Shown here: in pieces, positions 1 through 32,026 of the stretch
How the letters are laid out: each line of letters opens with the position of its first letter
Position numbering within the stretch: the stretch's first letter is position 1
Assembly: GCA_000320545.1 (NCBI GenBank)
Contig: ADNK01001809.1
Location: 1-33,274, forward strand
From: Bigelowiella natans CCMP2755
Taxonomy: Eukaryota > Protista > Cercozoa
Direction: 5' to 3'
DNA length: 33,274 nucleotides
The notes under the pieces: model-generated
Told to the model about the DNA's origin: nothing
The model's database searches: none
Seen by the model: only the letters and a program-made list of their open reading frames with translations
Made by a program: the position numbers and the translations under genes

Positions 1-285
1 AGATCCAAATTCAGGAACTGATGACACAACTTGGGGACAGGCACAAACCGGCAAATGCTGGAAGGTTCGCTCCAAATAGTGACTTGTAGACTTCCCAATA
101 CACTATAGATCTTATATGTATCTTGTAGTGGAAGTGTTCCATGCATGTAATCTTCACAGCAGTAATATATATACATGATTCTTATTGAGTATTGCAGTTG
201 AATCGCTTGACATGGTCATATGTTTCGTCTTTGGAAGTTTTTCTTTCCCCCCCCCCCCCCCTCCCCCCCATTCCCCCATCCGCAG

Positions 286-1206
286 AGCTCCAAGAAGAAC
301 AAGAAAGCTGCTGCTGGGCCTTTGACAGCATCGACGCCTTCTTCTGACCTCGCGCAGAGCGATAAAAACGCATACCGGAGAGCCTTCGTTGAAACGGCCT
401 ACTCGATAGCGGCAGCGCTGAGCTTCTGCTTGGCGCTCTACCTTCTCAAGGGGCCCACCGCTGGCCTTGAGTTCCTCTCGGGGTACCTCGTGGAAGAGTC
501 GCTGTCGGTTGACAATCTCTTCGTCTTCCTGCTGCTCTTCGACTTCTTCCAGGTTCCGCTCGAGGCGCAAAAGCGCGTGCTGCAGTGGGGCTTCATCGGC
601 GCGCTTGCGAGCCGCGGGCTGTTCATCGGGCTCGGCTCCGTGGCCATCCAGCAGTTTAAGGCCGTTGACCTCCTCTTCGCCGGCATTCTGATCTTCTCGT
701 CGTTCAAGATCCTCGCGGAGGACGGGGGGGGGGGCGAGGAGGACCTCCGCGAGAACCCCGTGGTGAAGTTTGCCTCGCGGTGGATCGAGACGACGGAGGA
801 GTACGACGGCGCCAACTTCTTCTCGCAGCTCCCCGACGGCCGGAAGGTCGCCACGCCGCTCTTCCTCGCCCTGGTGTGCATCGAGATCTCCGACGTCATC
901 TTCGCGATCGACTCGGTGCCGGCCGTCTTCGGGGTCACCAAAGACCCCATCATCGTGTTCACGTCCAACATGTTCGCCATCCTGGGGCTGCGGAGCTTGT
1001 ACACGGTGCTTTCGGCGGCCGTGCAGGACCTCGAGTACCTCGAGCCGGCCGTCGCGCTCATCTTGGGCTTCGTCGGCGCCAAGCTCGGCGCGGAGTACTT
1101 CGGGTATGAGGTCGGAACGATCCCTTCGCTCTCGGTCATCCTGACGTTGCTGGGGGGGGGCATAGGTCTGTCTCTAGTGAAAAATGCTCAGGAGGAGAGC
1201 ACGTAG
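286..1206 (+). CDS. terC: TerC/Alx-family integral membrane protein, long terminal exon (N-terminus lies in upstream exon(s), candidate <1..64)
   Basis: Family motifs EFLSGYLVEESLSVDNLFVF, QKRVLQWG, ATPLFLALVCIEISDVIFAIDSVPAVFGVTKDPIIVFTSNMFAILGLRSLY and several hydrophobic helices. The ORF-track start at 220 runs through a poly-C tract ending in CCGCAG (285), which looks like a splice acceptor. An in-phase donor AAG|GTTCGC sits at 64/65. Confidence 0.93.
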   Translation, partial: SSKKNKKAAAGPLTASTPSSDLAQSDKNAYRRAFVETAYSIAAALSFCLALYLLKGPTAGLEFLSGYLVEESLSVDNLFVFLLLFDFFQVPLEAQKRVLQWGFIGALASRGLFIGLGSVAIQQFKAVDLLFAGILIFSSFKILAEDGGGGEEDLRENPVVKFASRWIETTEEYDGANFFSQLPDGRKVATPLFLALVCIEISDVIFAIDSVPAVFGVTKDPIIVFTSNMFAILGLRSLYTVLSAAVQDLEYLEPAVALILGFVGAKLGAEYFGYEVGTIPSLSVILTLLGGGIGLSLVKNAQEEST

Positions 1207-7245: not shown

Positions 7246-8922
7246 CTATCGCCGCCGATCTCCATGTCTTGAAGTAGCAGAGGATGCTGAAGCCTTGCGC
7301 TGCGCTTGATCCTCTCTCTCCGCCAGCAACCGCTTGATAGCCTCTGGGTTTGGCAAAGCTTGCTCTAGGATCTCCACCAATCTCGGACCGTACACGCCGA
7401 AGATTGAATCGCCAGTGGCGGGGATTTTCCCTGCCTTTTCGTCCTCCTCGGCCCTTGCGTTCTCCTCCTCCGACATCTGCCTCAGCTCGGGCTCGAAAAT
7501 CGCGTCGACTTCGCTGTAGACCGTCTCCATAAGACGCACCGTGCTCTCGTCCTTTGCCTTGTTTTTCCTCTTCCGCTTCCGCAGCAGCAGCGCGTTCTGA
7601 CGGCGCGACAGCTTGTCCCCCGCTTCGCCTGGAATGAAGGGGTCTTGGAAGTCTAAAATCAGCTCTGGGCGCAGGTGGAGTGTGGAGACGGTTGCAAGGG
7701 CCGCCATAACGAGCCGCTGGCTGCTGGCGAAGTAGTCGTTCTTGATCAGAATGGCCTCGATCTGCCCGTCTTTGAGGAGAGCGTAGGGCGCCCAACTCGT
7801 CTCAGCTTTACTAAAGAGCAGCCAGTCGATCGGAACGAACTGGTGCGGAGGCGACTCGCACCCTCGTCTGGCCTGCACGCGCAGGATGAGCGTGCGCAGC
7901 TGCGGCACCGATACGTTCCGGAGACGATTCAGAGACCATCGAGACGATGGCAACGACGGTGAGGACGAGAAATTAAGCGTCTTTTGGAAGATCTCTAGCG
8001 TCGTTTCATTCATAATCAGCGAGGGGGGCTTCTCCCTCTGCAGCTCCTGGCCAGACGATACCGACGACGAATATGATACCCACGGATACAATAATCCACC
8101 TGGGGCTGACAATGAGTCATTGCTCCCTGATAACGAAGCGAGCAGGGACAGTGGCAACGAGGAGAACAGTTCCTTTCTGCTTTGCGCCCTCTCTCCCGGC
8201 GATAGTTTTGCCTCAAACTCGCGCGGCACCAGCCCAAAAAACCGCCCCCCCCGCCACAATTCTCCAGGGTTGATCGTATCTAGCTTCTTTGTCAGGGACA
8301 GCACGTAAACGCACGGTGCTGCCTCAGCGATGGAGGGCTGAAGAGGATTTTCCGGCTCTTTCATAACAGGACGGTTATCTGCGGGCGACAGCTCTAGAAT
8401 CGGTCTTATCAGGCGACAGAAACCGAACGTGCGACGCCTCAGACGAAGCAGGCCAGACTTGAGGGCTTCGAGCTGCGGGAGGGACTTCTTCCACTTGAGG
8501 AGGAGCTCTCTGCGAACGATCTTGCCCGACCGCGTGACGTTGCCGAAGAGGTTGAGCTCGATCTCTCGCAGCGCCTTGCGGTGCAGCCTCACGTGCGCGA
8601 GCGAAAACGCTGTGTAGGCGTCTCGGAGCTCGCCAAGGACCTTTCGCATCCGCGCGGACATCTTCTCGGCATCCTCGACGTCGAAGTCGCGCCAGGAATG
8701 AAGCTGGCGCGTGGCGGCCATTCTTCGTTCAAACAGCTCGCGCTCGTTGCTTGGTGGTCTGCCCGTTGGTTTGGAGTTGTGGGAGACCCCATAGTGCTTT
8801 CGCGAACTGTCTCCCAGCCCCCTACCTGCTGTGAGCCGTCCAGTTAACGCCGTTCCGAGAAGTGTTACGACAAAGACGACGAAGGCGCAGGGCCGTCGAT
8901 AGCGCCCCCCCCCTCGGATCAT
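7246..8922 (-). CDS. Intronless 558-aa hypothetical protein with N-terminal signal peptide/anchor
   Basis: Uninterrupted 1.68 kb ORF starting at ATG. A basic N-terminus is followed by hydrophobic AFVVFVVTLLGTAL, and the C-terminus is charged and helical. I recognise no domain. Confidence 0.75.
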   Translation of the reverse strand: MIRGGGRYRRPCAFVVFVVTLLGTALTGRLTAGRGLGDSSRKHYGVSHNSKPTGRPPSNERELFERRMAATRQLHSWRDFDVEDAEKMSARMRKVLGELRDAYTAFSLAHVRLHRKALREIELNLFGNVTRSGKIVRRELLLKWKKSLPQLEALKSGLLRLRRRTFGFCRLIRPILELSPADNRPVMKEPENPLQPSIAEAAPCVYVLSLTKKLDTINPGELWRGGRFFGLVPREFEAKLSPGERAQSRKELFSSLPLSLLASLSGSNDSLSAPGGLLYPWVSYSSSVSSGQELQREKPPSLIMNETTLEIFQKTLNFSSSPSLPSSRWSLNRLRNVSVPQLRTLILRVQARRGCESPPHQFVPIDWLLFSKAETSWAPYALLKDGQIEAILIKNDYFASSQRLVMAALATVSTLHLRPELILDFQDPFIPGEAGDKLSRRQNALLLRKRKRKNKAKDESTVRLMETVYSEVDAIFEPELRQMSEEENARAEEDEKAGKIPATGDSIFGVYGPRLVEILEQALPNPEAIKRLLAEREDQAQRKASASSATSRHGDRRR

Positions 8923-9633
8923 AGCGAGGAGGTTTTATGAAAGAAATTATAAAAACATCCGGTCGCAAGGCCATATGTAACGATGGTCATGGGATGTAGG
9001 GGCGGCTTGACCACATGCCGAGCGGGGGGAAGGGGGGTGGCAAGGCAGAGAGCAAGGACGGTCAACTGCTGCGCTAGTGGATAATTGCAGAAAAGGGATG
9101 TAATTCGTCTCTGCGACAAGGAATTTCCGTCTTAAAACTTTTAAAAACAAGAATTATGTTCGATTCGCATTTTCGATGGAAGAATTTAGAAGATGTTCGG
9201 AGAAAAAAAGGAACTAAATGCAGATGTTTCCTACAACAACTGGAAAACACCTCTGGAATGATCTAATGAAGATGTTAGATATATGTGGGTGTATTTATTT
9301 TCTTATCGGAAACATGTCTGGCAACAATTACGATAACGATCTAACGCTCTGCGGCCCTCCGCCAGCAATCGCCGTCCCTCCTCGCTTCTCATTAGAGGAT
9401 AGCAGTAAGAGCCAATTCGGTTGTTCAGCATTAAAACATCCTAACTTTACAGCCAGAGGACATCAACCGCATATACATGCGTGCGTGCAGGCAACATTGA
9501 AACGGAAACACACGTTAGATAATGATGAAACATCAAAAACCGCTGACCTGCATTACTGGAGCCTGAGCGCCATTCTCCTTAAGCGTTGGTCTTCACTACT
9601 TCCCTTCCCTTCCACTTAACGTTTCCTGCTACG

Positions 9634-12102
9634 ATGACGACGCGGTCTATTTGCACGGAAATCGGAGATTTCGTGTCGTACGTGCTCGACGACTTCACCC
9701 CCACTCTTCAGTACTACGAGACTGAGGTAACCCCAGAGGAACATCTTGTGGACAGGGTTCGAGGGGGGGGAGGGAAAGGCCGGAGGATACAAATACTGAA
9801 CGCGCATATCATCAAGGTCTTCGACCGCCGCGTGCAGTTTAGCTTCTGCATCGTAGCGGCCATTGCGCTGCTGCTCTTCGTGTATCAGTCCTTAGAAGAG
9901 CGAGCGATGGTGGAGTTTGACACGATATCTGGGGTGCTAACAGCCACAGTGAAACTACCCTCGAATCACGTGGTCAACACGACGACGCTCGACTACTGCC
10001 AGCGGCTGAAGAATCGAGACGGTGGCGACGAAGAAACGGAACTCGAGAAGAAGACGAAGAAGAAGAAGAAGAAGAAGAAGAAGAAGAAGAAGAAATCGTC
10101 GGCAAGATGCGAGATTTGGGATCCAAAGGAAGTGGTATATCCGAGCAGCAACACGGACAACACTCTCTCAATCACGACGTTCGCCCGGAGGAAGCTCTTC
10201 GAGCGGCGGTGCAGGAAGAGCGAGGAGGCGTGCGAAAAGGCCTTGGTCGAGGTTGACAGGCAGGACGTCGTCGTGGCCGGCGTTGAATCGTTGCAGGTGC
10301 AGATCGACCACATCGTGCAAGCAGCGCGCCTCTATCTTGACAGCATAGACGACAAGAGCACCCCCCCTCGGGGAAGCAGGAGCGCGGGTAGCAGGCCTAC
10401 GCAGCCAGGCCCGCAGCAGCAGGGGCAAGCCGACGACGAGGAGGGAGCTTTTGAACCCAAATTCGTCGGATCATGCCGCTGGATGAGGGGGCGACTGATG
10501 CATGGGGAGAAGGTCCTTCTGGAGCTCGATGGCAAGAAAACCGCGGGGAACGGTGGCAAAGACGTCGCCGGGCCTGATAAGATTCCCTTGAGCCTGCTGC
10601 TCGAGGCCGCCGACTTGCCCAGCTTAGACCTCCGTTCCGACGGCCACAAGAGAGGCAGCAAGGGCAAGGCCTACCGCATGCGCGGCGTGGTGCTGTTCGT
10701 GACGATCTCGTACACGAACATCGACCCCGAAGCATGGATCCCCCTCCCCTCAAACACCATTTGGTACGAGTACAGGGTGCTGCGAGCTCCTTACTCAGAG
10801 TTCTCCCACGTAGAACACCTCACCACCAGCGGACAGGCGCAGCGAGGACTCGAGAAGGACGAGGACGGGGGGGATAGCGGCGGGCGCGGGGGGGGGGCGA
10901 GACTGCTGAGCGGCGACGACGTCAAAGGCCCCTTCGACGGCGCGACATCGGCCGTGATGAAGAGGTACGCCGTGCACCTGAAATTCATCCAAACGGGGCA
11001 GATCGGCCGCCTGTCGCCCATGAACATTCTCGTGCAGATCATATCGATGCTCGGCATCATCGGCATCGCGCGCGTCTTCATGGACACCCTGGCCAAGTTC
11101 GCCTACCGGGAGGAGATCGCCCGCGCGGAGAAGGACCGCGAGCACGAGCTCTCCAAGCTGCGGACGACGTTCAGCTACTTCGACGCGGACGCGGACGGGA
11201 CGATCGATCTCGACGAGTTGAGCCAGATGCTGCACTCCATGGGGAAGCGCCTCTCCCGCGAGGAGGTCTTTCTGCTGGTGAAGAAGGTCAACCCCAACTG
11301 CTACAGGAGGGGGGAGGTGGCGATTGACTTCCCGCACTTCTGCATGCTTTTGGCCGTGTTCTCCGCCGAAGAGGTAGGACATCTCGTTGCCACGACAGAG
11401 ATGCGGGCCTCCGTGGACCGCCAGATCCGCGCTACCCCGTCTCGGGAAGGGGGGGGGGGCAGCATCATCAGCCGCAACCATGGCAGTGATGACGACGTCG
11501 ATGGCGGCGGCCGCGGCGAGGAGGCGAAGGGCGCCAATCACAACAGCGCTCCCGGCAGCCGCAACAGTCGCGCCGTAGAAACGAGGTTCCCGTCGAGAAT
11601 GGTCTCCGCCCCTGACATCTCGCAAATGGACGAATGGCGCATGCAACGATACGTCAGCCAAGCGATAAAGGAAAGGAAGAACGGGCAGTCGTCGCGGGTA
11701 AGGAGGCCGACCGCCAGGAGGGGGGCAGCAGCAGCTGCACAGCCAGCAATGGACGATGCCGATGAGGTTGGTGGCATTAATGACGATCAAGTAGAGGCTG
11801 CTGGTGGCGTAGGTGATGGCCTCTCAAACCAGGACGACGAAAAGGACAACTTCCATTATGGCCTACGACGGCGCCGCCCCTCTCGAAAAAAAGGGGCCCC
11901 GTCTACTCTAGCATACTCTCCTCGCCACCCACCAAGCGACGAATCCCCCACGTCTCCTGTAGCTGCACACCGGCAGCGTCAGCCGCGAAGTAGTCGGCGG
12001 CGCAATCATAGCGAGATCGTCAATGACAGAGACGCTTCGAGCGACTACGGCGCACGCAAAGGCCGGGCTGCAAGGCAAAAGAGGCAGAGACGGAAGAGGT
12101 AG
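9634..12102 (+). CDS. P2X: P2X receptor (ATP-gated cation channel, Dictyostelium/green-algal type) with C-terminal EF-hand pair
   Basis: Colinear with Dictyostelium P2XA-type motifs: DRR before TM1 (~9832-9894), G.L.ATVK.P, YC...C..WD, ITT, VAGVESLQVQIDH, PDKIPLSLLLEAA..SLD, RMRGVVLFVTISYTN, YEYRV, KRYAVHLKFIQTGQIG, and TM2 (~11020-11094) ending FMDTLA. EF-hand loop DADADGTIDLDE at 11182-11217. The first in-frame ATG is at 9634. Confidence 0.92.
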   Translation: MTTRSICTEIGDFVSYVLDDFTPTLQYYETEVTPEEHLVDRVRGGGGKGRRIQILNAHIIKVFDRRVQFSFCIVAAIALLLFVYQSLEERAMVEFDTISGVLTATVKLPSNHVVNTTTLDYCQRLKNRDGGDEETELEKKTKKKKKKKKKKKKKSSARCEIWDPKEVVYPSSNTDNTLSITTFARRKLFERRCRKSEEACEKALVEVDRQDVVVAGVESLQVQIDHIVQAARLYLDSIDDKSTPPRGSRSAGSRPTQPGPQQQGQADDEEGAFEPKFVGSCRWMRGRLMHGEKVLLELDGKKTAGNGGKDVAGPDKIPLSLLLEAADLPSLDLRSDGHKRGSKGKAYRMRGVVLFVTISYTNIDPEAWIPLPSNTIWYEYRVLRAPYSEFSHVEHLTTSGQAQRGLEKDEDGGDSGGRGGGARLLSGDDVKGPFDGATSAVMKRYAVHLKFIQTGQIGRLSPMNILVQIISMLGIIGIARVFMDTLAKFAYREEIARAEKDREHELSKLRTTFSYFDADADGTIDLDELSQMLHSMGKRLSREEVFLLVKKVNPNCYRRGEVAIDFPHFCMLLAVFSAEEVGHLVATTEMRASVDRQIRATPSREGGGGSIISRNHGSDDDVDGGGRGEEAKGANHNSAPGSRNSRAVETRFPSRMVSAPDISQMDEWRMQRYVSQAIKERKNGQSSRVRRPTARRGAAAAAQPAMDDADEVGGINDDQVEAAGGVGDGLSNQDDEKDNFHYGLRRRRPSRKKGAPSTLAYSPRHPPSDESPTSPVAAHRQRQPRSSRRRNHSEIVNDRDASSDYGARKGRAARQKRQRRKR
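10057..10095 (+). repeat. (AAG)n coding microsatellite giving 13 consecutive Lys in the P2X ectodomain
   Basis: 12 AAG plus AAA, in frame. Confidence 0.95.
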
Positions 12103-12159
12103 GTGTCAAAGACGACGACGCGGGGTGTTGATCTTAAATGGGACGGAATAGTGCGCTGC

Positions 12160-12881
12160 AGTCACAAGCTAGGAGTCAACAAGTCACAGGTAGCGGTGTC
12201 AATCCTTATCAATCCTCTGTGACGTAATATTCGGTTGTGTTCAATAATTATTACTCTCTGGTAGCTTCCTCGTGTTGTATGCAATCACATGCGCAATGGG
12301 TAATAAGTAGCTCGCATCAAATCACGCACACACGCTCTCTCGCAGATAGCAGGAAATCATGCCATGCATGCAACTAGCAGCATGGAACGGCACTCGCTAG
12401 TATGCTACGCTAGCATGTTTATTCGATACGATGTACACGAATGAATGTCTAGATGTCTAGATGTGAACGTCCAAGCCGCGCACAGAAACAAGCTTGCATT
12501 AAGTCTTTGCATCACAACTTCTAGAACTTCTCTCTGCAAATTGTTTGAATACACAGATCGCGCGGGCAAGCAGGCGATATGCTAGGCGAGACTTAGCCAT
12601 TTGAACACGCAACTATCGATCACTGCCATCGATCATCGTGCCAGCGCGCACGCTGCATGATATCATATTGCTGTGTCTATTATCTACGCTGTATCATATT
12701 CCAGTCTAGCTGGACCCTGCTGAATACTCACAGGCAAAATGTACAATACATGTGTAGCTGCTTTGCATAGCTAACTACATCAGGATGACCATTGTAAAGA
12801 CTTAACCACTTCACTACATCCGTCGTCTCACAATGCATGTGTGTGTTATATTTACAATGTACGGGCCGTGTTTAACATTGT

Positions 12882-31336: not shown

Positions 31337-32026
31337 ATGGCTGCTCGGATCTGCGTCCAATGGCTGCGGAAGGCCTCCCCCTTGTATCGGCCGTGCCGAA
31401 AGCGTCTGTTCAGCACGGTGGGGAGGGATCCGCAGGAGGGTCATAGGCCTTTGAGCCCACTGCAAAAGGAACGAACGCTGATTATGGTGAAGCCTGACGG
31501 GGTTCAGAGAGGGCTCGTAGGCGAGGTCATATCCCGGTTTGAGCGGAAAGGCTTTAAGCTTTGTGGGGTCAAGATGGCAGCTCCGACACGCGCCCAGGCA
31601 GAAGCTCACTACGAAGAGCACAAGGGCAAGCCCTTCTTTCCTCGCCCGTGCCGGTTTCTCACCGGTGGCCCCGTTGTAGCCATGGTGTGGGAGGGGTTGG
31701 GGGTCGTCACAGTCTCCCGGAAGATGATCGGTCCGACGAATCCTGAGGATGCTGCTCCGGGCACAATACGCGGCGATTTCGCGGCGCATTTCCGAAGGAA
31801 CATCGTTCATGGCTCGGACTCGCCGGAGGCGGCTGCGAGGGAAATTGGCCAGTGGTTCTCAACGGAGGAGGTTGTGAGCTGGGGCGCGAGCGCATCGAAT
31901 TGGGTTTATGAGCTTCCAAACGCCCCGTGCCAATTTGAGCCTACTGACGGTGATGACACACACCATGGACATATGAATGGACTGCCTGGGGTCGAACACG
32001 AAGAGCTTCCCTTCCATAAGTCGTGA
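31337..32026 (+). CDS. NDK: Nucleoside diphosphate kinase (group I), probably mitochondrion-targeted, intronless
   Basis: Motifs ERTLIMVKPDGVQRGLVGEVISRFERKGFKL, HYEEHKGKPFF, GPVVAMVWEG, PGTIRGDF, catalytic RNIVHGSDS and WVYE. The N-terminal ~30 residues are Arg-rich with no acidic residues and include RKRLFST, typical of a mitochondrial presequence. Confidence 0.97.
   Translation: MAARICVQWLRKASPLYRPCRKRLFSTVGRDPQEGHRPLSPLQKERTLIMVKPDGVQRGLVGEVISRFERKGFKLCGVKMAAPTRAQAEAHYEEHKGKPFFPRPCRFLTGGPVVAMVWEGLGVVTVSRKMIGPTNPEDAAPGTIRGDFAAHFRRNIVHGSDSPEAAAREIGQWFSTEEVVSWGASASNWVYELPNAPCQFEPTDGDDTHHGHMNGLPGVEHEELPFHKS

What the first reader, a model, noticed from the sequence alone, without database searches (positions are those of the whole stretch)
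9634..12102. P2X ATP-gated channel fused to a cytosolic calmodulin-like EF-hand lobe
Seen: a complete two-TM P2X core, followed about 16 aa after TM2 and in the same ORF by ELSKLRTTFSYF-DADADGTIDLDE-LSQMLHSMGKRLSREEVFLLVKKV-NPNCYRRGEVAIDFPHF-CMLL. This is one canonical 12-residue Ca2+ loop (D1, D3, D5, G6, I8, E12; 11182-11217) paired with a degenerate second hand, then a ~250-aa disordered tail. The two Lys positions linked to ATP sensing (ATVK, MKR) and the TM2 Asp (FMD) appear retained. Established: animal and Dictyostelium P2X receptors are Ca2+-permeable trimers without EF hands. Inference: a purinergic channel with a built-in Ca2+ feedback sensor (three lobes under the pore), acting as an ATP/Ca2+ coincidence detector. 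I cannot exclude that this architecture is already reported in some algae.
Basis: partly seen in the sequence, partly recalled or inferred. Interest (0 to 1): 0.85.

Follow-up and report, generated by a model that had tools for sequence, protein, structure and literature searches.

The report
P2X-type channel with built-in calcium sensor
An alga (probably Bigelowiella natans) expresses an intron-free gene for a very divergent P2X-type channel subunit whose pore helix runs straight into a calmodulin-like calcium-binding module, a layout I found in no paper, although ATP gating and calcium control are both untested.

Summary
Window 9634-12102 (+) is one 822-aa ORF.

**P2X core.** Residues ~58-490 are a complete P2X-fold subunit (TM1, ectodomain, TM2).
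- Pfam alone sees only the TM2 region, below its cut-off.
- A profile of this small family finds 232 relatives, and 40 of 43 aligned sequences match PF00864.
- hhalign gives 100% probability (E 1.4e-50) over residues 58-489.
- The AF2 model matches only solved P2X receptors (Z 16.2).

**EF-hand module.** Residues ~496-575 form an EF-hand pair with one canonical loop (11182-11217) and one degenerate loop. In the model, TM2 continues almost unbroken into the first EF helix. This junction has no indels in the three family members and is their best-conserved part.

**Expression.** Transcript-like contigs from three studies cover 10105-12292 without joints.

**Relatives.** The family falls among Dictyostelium-type ("Branch 1") P2X receptors. 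It keeps two of the four classical ATP-contact residues.

**Novelty.** At least one further P2X lineage gained EF-hands independently, and no searched paper describes the layout. I rate it a new variant of a known kind.

**Untested.** ATP gating and Ca2+ feedback are inferences. The scan had not met this on other DNA.

The parts
9359..12323 (+). Approximate transcript extent (5' UTR, ORF, about 200-nt 3' UTR)
   Evidence: Contigs of three runs from different studies start at 9359-9391 and end at 12219-12292. There is no coverage in 9153-9303 or 12324-12625. Reads from a true RNA-seq run pile up at 11871-12323 on the + strand.
9634..12102 (+). Intron-free ORF of 822 aa plus stop codon: P2X-like core, EF-hand pair, disordered tail
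   Evidence: No joints or indels appear in the contigs laid on it.
9715..9741 (+). Conserved N-terminal acidic motif Y-E-T-E-V-T-P-E-E (aa 28-36), cytosolic
   Evidence: Eight of its nine residues are invariant in all three family members. It lies 26 residues upstream of where the canonical YxTxK/R motif aligns, which is I54-x-N56 here.
9826..9900 (+). TM1 (aa 65-89)
   Evidence: Helix 65-89 with pLDDT >85 in both AF2 models. It aligns with TM1 of human P2X2.
9901..11016 (+). Ectodomain (aa 90-461) with P2X beta-sandwich body. Includes K107 (9952-9954) and K443 (10960-10962).
   Evidence: hhalign 100% probability, fold match Z 16.2, residue mapping.
10024..10104 (+). Lys-rich low-complexity insert in the head region (aa ~131-157, including a run of 13 Lys)
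   Evidence: translation. pLDDT is 54-61. It is also K-rich in the Amorphochlora homologue and absent from P0002. Contigs break here because of the repeat.
11017..11103 (+). TM2, the pore-lining helix (aa 462-490), with conserved Asp D484 (11083-11085)
   Evidence: Pfam P2X hit over aa 440-490. Aligns to human P2X4 311-360. The D484 column is D or E in 40 of 41 relatives.
11104..11181 (+). Juxtamembrane helix (aa 491-516), which is also the entering helix of EF-hand 1
   Evidence: AF2 model 2 has helix 462-490, a one-residue break, then helix 492-517. The segment has no gaps and 42% invariant columns in the family.
11182..11217 (+). Canonical 12-residue Ca2+-binding loop of EF-hand 1 (aa 517-528)
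   Evidence: D1, D3, D5, G6, I8, D9 and E12 are present. The ligand pattern is kept in all three family members. Pfam EF-hand hits.
11119..11358 (+). EF-hand pair, resembling a calmodulin N-lobe (aa 496-575)
   Evidence: phmmer to calmodulin chains at E ~3e-12. EF-hand_7 above its cut-off. Helix-loop-helix pair in the model with pLDDT 74-89.
11290..11340 (+). Degenerate second EF loop (aa 553-569)
   Evidence: A 4-residue insertion relative to calmodulin, and His/Arg instead of Glu at position 12, in all three members.
11365..11394 (+). Conserved extra helix after the EF pair (aa 578-587)
   Evidence: Helix 578-587 in model 2. V581, L584 and V585 are invariant.
11404..12099 (+). Low-complexity, poorly conserved tail (aa 591-822) ending in a conserved polybasic cluster (about 12055-12099)
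   Evidence: No Pfam hit. 4% invariant columns and many gaps, but R814, R819 and R820 are invariant.

Best explanation
The gene encodes a subunit of a divergent, Dictyostelium-type ('Branch 1') P2X-family cation channel. By homology the channel is a trimer.

The ligand-binding ectodomain faces outside the cell or into an organelle lumen. The pore-lining TM2 helix continues, almost without a break, into the first helix of a cytosolic EF-hand pair that has one working Ca2+ site.

Proposed mechanism (inferred): the luminal or extracellular ligand, most likely ATP or a related nucleotide, opens the pore. Ca2+ that enters, or is already raised in the cytosol, binds the EF-1 loop about 30 residues below the membrane. 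The resulting change in the EF lobe is passed through the rigid juxtamembrane helix to TM2 and tunes gating, as facilitation, inactivation or desensitisation. This would do in cis what the EF-hand proteins VILIP1 and calmodulin do in trans at the C-terminal juxtamembrane region of animal P2X2 and P2X7.

Shown here: the fold, the homology, the fusion, the conservation and the expression. Inferred: trimer, ligand identity, Ca2+ binding, and any effect on gating.
For: P2X homology over the whole core:
- The family-only profile finds 232 relatives.
- 40 of 43 aligned sequences match PF00864.
- hhalign gives 100% probability, E 1.4e-50, over aa 58-489.
- AF2 model 1 (pLDDT 80, pTM 0.76) matches P2X structures only.

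Placement. Named relatives are 'P2X receptor E(-like)' from Stylophora and Sycon. [quoted passage not shown]

Residues kept. K107 (K69 equivalent), K443 (K313 equivalent), D484, and the branch-invariant R348, G351, N362, H226, R444 and G455.

EF pair.. The canonical EF-1 ligand pattern is present in all three members.

Junction. A near-continuous helix runs from 462 to 517. From TM2 to the end of the EF-1 loop there are no indels, and the helix and loop after TM2 (aa 491-528) have 42% invariant columns against 4% in the tail.

Expression. Contigs are colinear over 10105-12292 in three studies, and real RNA reads lie at the 3' end. The identical fused protein of Amorphochlora is also held in the MMETSP transcriptome source.

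Recurrence. P2X lineages gained EF-hands at least twice independently, which argues for a functional advantage.

Precedent in trans. VILIP1 on P2X2 and calmodulin on P2X7 (PMC3360091).
Against: - Pfam's own P2X model is below its cut-off and covers only TM2.
- Direct similarity to solved animal P2X is weak (E 0.1-0.8).
- Four of six vertebrate ATP-contact positions are changed. S391 replaces the K/R found in 27 of 41 relatives, so ATP may not be the ligand.
- The canonical N-terminal YxTxK/R motif is not present at its aligned position.
- The residue mapping rests on sequence alignments, not on a residue-level superposition.
- The AF2 alignments were made mostly of P2X relatives, so the fold match is not fully independent of the profile evidence.
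- Only one of the two EF loops is canonical.
- Nothing tested here addresses Ca2+ binding, oligomeric state, membrane location or gating. The trimer prediction of aa 455-592 gave no answer.
Confidence: 0.5

Rival explanations
1. A P2X-fold channel that no longer responds to ATP. The ectodomain binds another ligand or none, and the channel is opened mainly from the inside by Ca2+ binding to the EF lobe. It would then be a Ca2+-activated cation or Ca2+-release channel, for example on an internal store.
For: The K67, T186, N293 and R295 equivalents are lost. S391 departs even from the branch-typical K/R. The family sits on a long stem branch of length 0.72. The EF lobe is rigidly and invariantly joined to the pore helix. 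Dictyostelium relatives are intracellular Ca2+-release channels (PMC3853471).
Against: The whole ectodomain is conserved, with 31% invariant columns and the branch invariants R348, R444, H226 and N362 kept. That argues for a ligand-binding role still in use. Branch 1 receptors are ATP-gated despite lacking classical residues. No P2X relative gated by Ca2+ alone is known to me (own knowledge).
Confidence: 0.2
2. The EF lobe does not act on the gate. It makes trafficking, clustering, membrane docking or partner binding depend on Ca2+, possibly together with the conserved polybasic C-terminal end. The channel core works like any Branch 1 P2X.
For: A long disordered tail with a conserved basic C-terminus follows the lobe. 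In the other two P2X-EF lineages the EF-hands lie 100-190 residues from TM2, too far for rigid coupling. VILIP1 also alters the surface expression of P2X2.
Against: In this family the TM2-to-EF spacing has no indels and is the best-conserved segment, and it is modelled as one helix. That is more than a tether would require.
Confidence: 0.2
3. The EF pair is a structural relic that binds no Ca2+ and serves only as a folded cytosolic cap.
For: The second loop is degenerate in all members. The Pfam score is only just above the cut-off.
Against: EF-1 keeps every canonical ligand position (1, 3, 5, 9, 12, plus G6 and I8) in three proteins that are only about 50% identical overall.
Confidence: 0.08
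4. Artefact: two neighbouring genes joined by misassembly or read-through, or a pseudogene.
For: Contigs from the read sets break at the poly-Lys repeat at 10042-10104. The runs that gave the long contigs are only guessed to be RNA.
Against: The break lies upstream of the fusion point. Single contigs span 10105-12292 in three studies, with no coverage of the flanking intergenic DNA. The same fused ORF is present in Amorphochlora, across many introns and with a transcriptome source, and in an unrelated metagenome contig. The ORF is intact and conserved.
Confidence: 0.02

Closest known systems
Dictyostelium-type ('Branch 1') P2X receptors: DdP2XA-E and the 'P2X receptor E-like' proteins of sponges and cnidarians
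   Same: Same fold and homologous over TM1, ectodomain and TM2. They also lack about half of the vertebrate ATP-contact residues and the ten vertebrate cysteines. They share the invariant R348, G351, N362, H226, R444, G455 and TM2 Asp positions.
   Different: - Those proteins are about 350-490 aa and have no EF-hand.
- This family has a long stem branch, Ser instead of K/R at the NFR/EFK position, no YxTxK/R at the aligned site, large low-complexity inserts, and an EF-hand pair plus a 230-aa tail after TM2.
Animal P2X2-VILIP1 and rat P2X7-calmodulin complexes
   Same: An EF-hand Ca2+ sensor acts at the C-terminal juxtamembrane region of a P2X receptor and gives activity-dependent and Ca2+-dependent feedback (PMC3360091).
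   Different: There the sensor is a separate protein that binds reversibly. Here it is part of the same polypeptide, one per subunit, starting about 10-15 residues after TM2. Its function here is untested.
P2X7 C-terminal cytoplasmic domain
   Same: A P2X subunit that gained a large cytosolic domain after TM2 by gene fusion (mentioned in PMC10620158).
   Different: The P2X7 domain is not an EF-hand (own knowledge), and P2X7 belongs to the other P2X branch.
Cation channels with EF-hands in cis: polycystin-2 (TRPP2) C-terminal EF-hand and TPC1/TPC2
   Same: A Ca2+-permeable channel carries its own EF-hand. Polycystin-2 also has one canonical and one degenerate hand after the last TM helix (own knowledge). 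The second TPC EF-hand is needed for Ca2+-dependent gating in plants (PMC11085791).
   Different: Unrelated channel folds (tetrameric 6-TM type against trimeric 2-TM P2X). The resemblance is in working principle only.
Other P2X-EF-hand fusions in public assemblies: P0095, and the P0098/P0151/P0166/P0167/P0168 family
   Same: PF00864 together with an EF-hand pair or pairs C-terminal to TM2.
   Different: - They score above the Pfam P2X cut-off, and P0095 keeps YxTxK.
- Their EF-hands start about 100 and about 190 residues after TM2, and P0095 has four hands.
- They lie in another part of the tree, and at least two separate gains are forced.
- All come from unnamed organisms, and I found no paper describing them.

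Membership tests
P2X receptor family (PF00864; trimeric ATP-gated cation channels) | Match to the curated Pfam model above its gathering score | tested here: not met
   22.4 bits against a cut-off of 27, over aa 440-490 only. The other two family members behave the same way, at 19-23 bits.
P2X receptor family (PF00864; trimeric ATP-gated cation channels) | Homology over the whole subunit (TM1, ectodomain, TM2), shown by profile methods | tested here: met
   hmmsearch with the family-only profile finds 232 hits, 37 of them at E<=1e-10. 40 of 43 aligned sequences are PF00864 proteins. hhalign gives 100% probability, E 1.4e-50, with 324 columns aligned over aa 58-489.
P2X receptor family (PF00864; trimeric ATP-gated cation channels) | P2X subunit fold: two TM helices and a beta-sandwich body | tested here: met
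   AF2 pLDDT 80 and pTM 0.76. The Foldseek top 50 are all P2X, at E 5e-13. VIA Z 16.2, rmsd 3.0 A, 255 of 327 residues of human P2X2. Caveat: the alignment used for folding consisted mainly of P2X relatives.
P2X receptor family (PF00864; trimeric ATP-gated cation channels) | ATP-contact residues (human P2X4 K67, K69, T186, N293, R295, K313) | tested here: inconclusive
   K69 and K313 equivalents are kept (K107, K443). The K67, T186, N293 and R295 equivalents are T105, Q221, E389 and S391. [quoted passage not shown] The mapping is by alignment only.
P2X receptor family (PF00864; trimeric ATP-gated cation channels) | Conserved acidic residue at the cytosolic end of TM2 | tested here: met
   D484 is invariant in the family. 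The column is D in 33 and E in 7 of 41 relatives.
P2X receptor family (PF00864; trimeric ATP-gated cation channels) | N-terminal YxTxK/R motif just before TM1 | tested here: not met
   I54-x-N56-x-H58 stands at the aligned position (model residue 51 corresponds to P2X3 residue 7). A similar Y-E-T-E-V lies 26 residues upstream.
P2X receptor family (PF00864; trimeric ATP-gated cation channels) | Homotrimeric assembly, and cation current evoked by ATP | not testable with these tools
   A trimer prediction of aa 455-592 gave no answer. The full-length trimer exceeds the tool's size limit. Electrophysiology is needed.
EF-hand Ca2+-binding domain pair (PF13499; calmodulin-like lobe) | Match to the curated model above its cut-off, and similarity to calmodulin | tested here: met
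   EF-hand_7 at 31.4 bits against 30. Calmodulin chains at E 3e-12 over aa 496-575.
EF-hand Ca2+-binding domain pair (PF13499; calmodulin-like lobe) | Canonical 12-residue loop (ligands at positions 1, 3, 5, 9, 12, with Gly6 and a hydrophobic residue at 8) | tested here: met
   Met for EF-1 (aa 517-528) in all three members. Not met for EF-2, which has an insertion and His/Arg at position 12.
EF-hand Ca2+-binding domain pair (PF13499; calmodulin-like lobe) | Ca2+ binding | not testable with these tools
   Needs ITC, 45Ca overlay or NMR on the isolated lobe.

The most novel reading that the evidence does not exclude
The EF lobes, one under each TM2 of the trimer, form a Ca2+-dependent cytoplasmic cap that sets opening or desensitisation. 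The channel would then integrate a luminal or extracellular nucleotide signal with cytosolic Ca2+, as a self-contained coincidence detector or a Ca2+-induced Ca2+-release element. Protist P2X lineages would have arrived at this solution more than once, and animals would achieve it only with separate EF-hand proteins.
Probability: 0.3. Interest if true: 0.8.

Novelty: new variant of a known kind. Interest (0 to 1): 0.6.

Why it matters
P2X receptors are a major class of ligand-gated channels. Their regulation by intracellular Ca2+ is known only through separate partners (VILIP1, calmodulin) and is poorly understood structurally.

A natural P2X in which the Ca2+ sensor is welded to the pore helix would be a compact model for three questions:
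- how events at the cytoplasmic end of TM2 control P2X gating and desensitisation;
- how Ca2+ feedback evolved in purinergic signalling;
- what Dictyostelium-type P2X receptors do in algae.

It also extends known P2X diversity. Pfam's curated cut-off misses this family, and I found no paper reporting P2X in chlorarachniophytes. At least two independent P2X-EF fusions suggest a general selective advantage. If the EF lobe has no effect on function, this remains a modest domain-shuffling case in a genome where other EF-hand insertions have been noted.

Tried and rejected
- **Direct sequence searches.** Pfam and direct phmmer/hmmsearch against PDB with the window protein or the two-sequence profile gave only weak, TM2-limited P2X hits. 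Intermediate sequences were needed.
- **Metagenome scan.** A scan with patterns from the N-terminal motifs found no further family member.
- **Paralogues.** The search in the own genome found none, only a generic EF-hand match and a low-complexity match.
- **P0095 search.** A word-based homologue search with P0095 returned only itself.
- **Trimer prediction.** Prediction for aa 455-592 with three copies gave 'no answer', score 0.00, no controls run. This is neither support nor evidence against.
- **ESM Atlas.** It gave only leads, namely P2X clusters from Chlorophyta and Nucleocytoviricota.
- **Antisense ORF.** The 331-aa ORF at 10795-11790 (-) is rejected as a gene. It is a shadow ORF in GC-rich coding sequence, and no minus-strand reads support it.
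- **Misassembly or read-through.** Rejected.
- The Amorphochlora gene is spread over about 20 kb with introns, so I used its database protein as given and built no spliced model myself.
Full report
**1. What is in the sequence**

- Window 9586-12102 (+) is one open frame. The first ATG is at 9634, which gives 822 aa.
- The coding part has about 60% G+C against 42-49% in the flanks.
- The genome is 91.4 Mb in 3,736 contigs.
- The nearest named homologue comes from the chlorarachniophyte Amorphochlora amoebiformis.
That fits, but I did not verify it independently.

**2. The EF-hand part**

- Pfam EF-hand_7 passes its cut-off, at 31.4 against 30 bits, over aa 507-556.
- phmmer against PDB aligns aa 496-575 with the N-lobe of calmodulin at E about 3e-12.
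- The loop at aa 517-528 (11182-11217) has Asp at positions 1, 3, 5 and 9, Gly at 6, Ile at 8 and Glu at 12.
- The second loop has a four-residue insertion relative to calmodulin and His at position 12.
- All three family members have a canonical first loop and a degenerate second loop.

**3. The P2X part**

Pfam sees only aa 440-490 (profile positions 297-347 of 361) at 22.4 bits, below the cut-off of 27. Direct comparison with solved P2X chains is weak, at E 0.1-0.8.

I built a profile from only the P2X-side halves of the window protein and its metagenomic homologue (A2). I searched it against 1.84 billion representative proteins, with these results:
- 232 hits at E<=1e-3 and 37 at E<=1e-10. 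Most are 350-450 aa and match in three or four stretches between profile positions 62 and 504.
- Of 43 aligned sequences, 40 match PF00864, the best at E 7.9e-23.
- The joint profile hits solved P2X4, P2X2 and P2X1 at E 1e-32 to 1e-23.
- hhalign between the two-sequence family profile and 30 of these relatives, with the family excluded, gives probability 100%, E 1.4e-50, with 324 columns aligned over aa 58-489.

An AF2 model of aa 1-495 has pLDDT 80 and pTM 0.76.
- Foldseek returns only P2X receptors in the top 50, at E 5e-13.
- VIA-align gives Z 16.2, rmsd 3.0 A, over 255 of 327 residues of human P2X2, spanning model residues 65-489 from TM1 to TM2.
- Caveat: the folding alignment consisted mostly of P2X relatives.

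**4. Place in the P2X family**

- The named hits are 'P2X receptor E(-like)' from a coral and a sponge. This is the Dictyostelium-type Branch 1 of PMC10620158.
- In a quick ML tree of 101 sequences, the window protein, the Amorphochlora protein and P0002 form a clade with 100% support on a long stem (0.72). The clade sits inside a supported set of 40 sequences that includes the sponge sequence P0007; the coral sequence was too short for the tree.
- The same genome also has an ordinary, intron-rich P2X gene with an N-F-R motif, on contig C465. It scores above the Pfam cut-off.
- The EF-fused gene is single-copy.

**5. Functional residues**

These are mapped by alignment.

| Window residue | Human P2X4 equivalent | Status |
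|---|---|---|
| K107 | K69 | kept |
| K443 | K313 | kept |
| D484 | TM2 Asp | kept |
| T105 | K67 | changed |
| Q221 | T186 | changed |
| E389 | N293 | changed |
| S391 | R295 | changed |

- Branch 1 relatives usually read E-F-K where vertebrates read N-F-R. Twenty-seven of 41 have K or R at that position, and this family has Ser.
- The positions invariant in the branch (R348, G351, N362, H226, R444, G455) are all kept.
- ATP gating is therefore plausible but not secure.
- The YxTxK/R motif is absent from its aligned position. An invariant Y-E-T-E-V-T-P-E-E sits 26 residues upstream.

**6. The junction**

A second model (aa 1-600, pLDDT 78.5) shows:
- TM2 as helix 462-490;
- a one-residue break;
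- helix 492-517, which is the entering helix of EF-1;
- then the EF pair and an extra conserved helix at 578-587.

Across the three family members there is no indel from TM2 to the end of the EF-1 loop. That segment is the best-conserved part, with 42% invariant columns. The ectodomain has 31% and the tail 4%. This is the main argument for mechanical coupling between Ca2+ binding and the pore helix. It remains an inference.

**7. Expression**

- Contigs from three runs in different studies start at 9359-9391 and end at 12219-12292. They leave the flanking intergenic DNA uncovered and show no joints or differences.
- Single contigs span 10105-12292, which covers the late ectodomain, TM2, the EF pair, the tail, the stop codon and the 3' UTR.
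- The only break is at the poly-Lys repeat at 10042-10104.
- A run recorded as RNA-seq (raw reads, 3'-biased) covers 11871-12323 on the + strand.
- The three contig runs are only guessed to be RNA, but their coverage pattern is that of transcripts.
- The Amorphochlora orthologue is spread over about 20 kb of genome with introns. The identical 666-aa fused protein is held by a transcriptome source.
- P0002 is a single exon on a metagenome contig.

**8. Is the layout known?**

- Full-text searches combining P2X with EF-hand, protist, algae or domain architecture, and P2X with Bigelowiella, found no description of such a fusion.
- The layout does recur in sequence data:
  - P0095 (817 aa) has a Pfam-positive P2X core and four EF-hands starting about 100 residues after TM2.
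  - P0098/P0151 and their relatives P0166, P0167 and P0168 (39-73% identical) have an EF pair about 190 residues after TM2.
- These lie elsewhere in the tree, and at least two gains are forced by well-supported branches.
- Animal P2X receptors use EF-hand proteins in trans at the same place. VILIP1 binds the P2X2 C-terminal juxtamembrane region in a Ca2+-dependent and activity-dependent way, and calmodulin binds rat P2X7 (PMC3360091).

**9. Verdict**

The anatomical reading (P2X core plus cis EF-hand lobe) is supported.
- The mechanistic reading (ATP/Ca2+ coincidence detection) is a reasonable hypothesis without direct evidence.
- It is a new variant of a known kind: a divergent Branch 1 P2X-like channel with a Ca2+ sensor fused directly to TM2. 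It is restricted, as far as I can see, to chlorarachniophytes and one uncultured relative.
- A trimer prediction of the TM2-EF fragment gave no answer and is not used as evidence.

Noticed in passing
G000:C465:34128-35500 (-) (loci L004-L006): The same genome has an ordinary, intron-rich P2X gene. Its exons match PF00864 above the cut-off (39.7 bits). It carries an N-F-R motif, a K-x-Y-G-I pre-TM2 strand and a TM2, with no EF-hand seen in the exons read. A further weak P2X-like exon lies at C2421:51175-51273.
   Followed up: partly
L009:47-2500 (P0095); L010:1954-4143 (P0098); L014:4001-6235 (P0167): Two other, more canonical P2X lineages in public assemblies carry EF-hands C-terminal to TM2. 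One has four hands about 100 aa after TM2, and the other has a pair about 190 aa after it. The second lineage is conserved across four clusters at 39-73% identity. The organisms are not named.
   Followed up: partly
window 10024-10104: A run of 13 lysines, within a K/E-rich insert, sits in the ectodomain head region between the conserved Cys122 and Cys159. The Amorphochlora orthologue is also K-rich here, and P0002 lacks the insert. A polycationic patch beside the presumed nucleotide pocket is odd and unexplained.
   Followed up: no
window 9715-9741 and 12055-12099: Two short cytosolic motifs are conserved in all three family members despite poor conservation around them. One is an N-terminal acidic Y-E-T-E-V-T-P-E-E with two Thr-Pro-like sites. 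The other is a polybasic C-terminal end. They may be regulatory or sorting signals.
   Followed up: no
ESM Atlas clusters: The nearest named clusters to the window protein are P2X_receptor-bearing clusters of 558 and 652 aa. Their members with a taxon record are mostly Nucleocytoviricota and Chlorophyta. This hints that giant viruses carry long P2X-like genes, but it is a lead only.
   Followed up: no
window 220-1206 (+), 7246-8922 (-), 31337-32026 (+): Neighbouring ORFs. A TerC-family membrane protein at 220-1206 (E 4e-46). An expressed 558-aa ORF with no Pfam match immediately upstream on the opposite strand, with contigs covering 8700-9061. A nucleoside diphosphate kinase at 31337-32026 (E 5e-57).
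   Followed up: partly
same genome, other pieces (scan notes s1-769095, s1-718279): Earlier notes report EF-hand modules inserted into a serpin and into a ROCO/NLR-like protein of this genome. EF-hand shuffling may be frequent in this alga.
   Followed up: no
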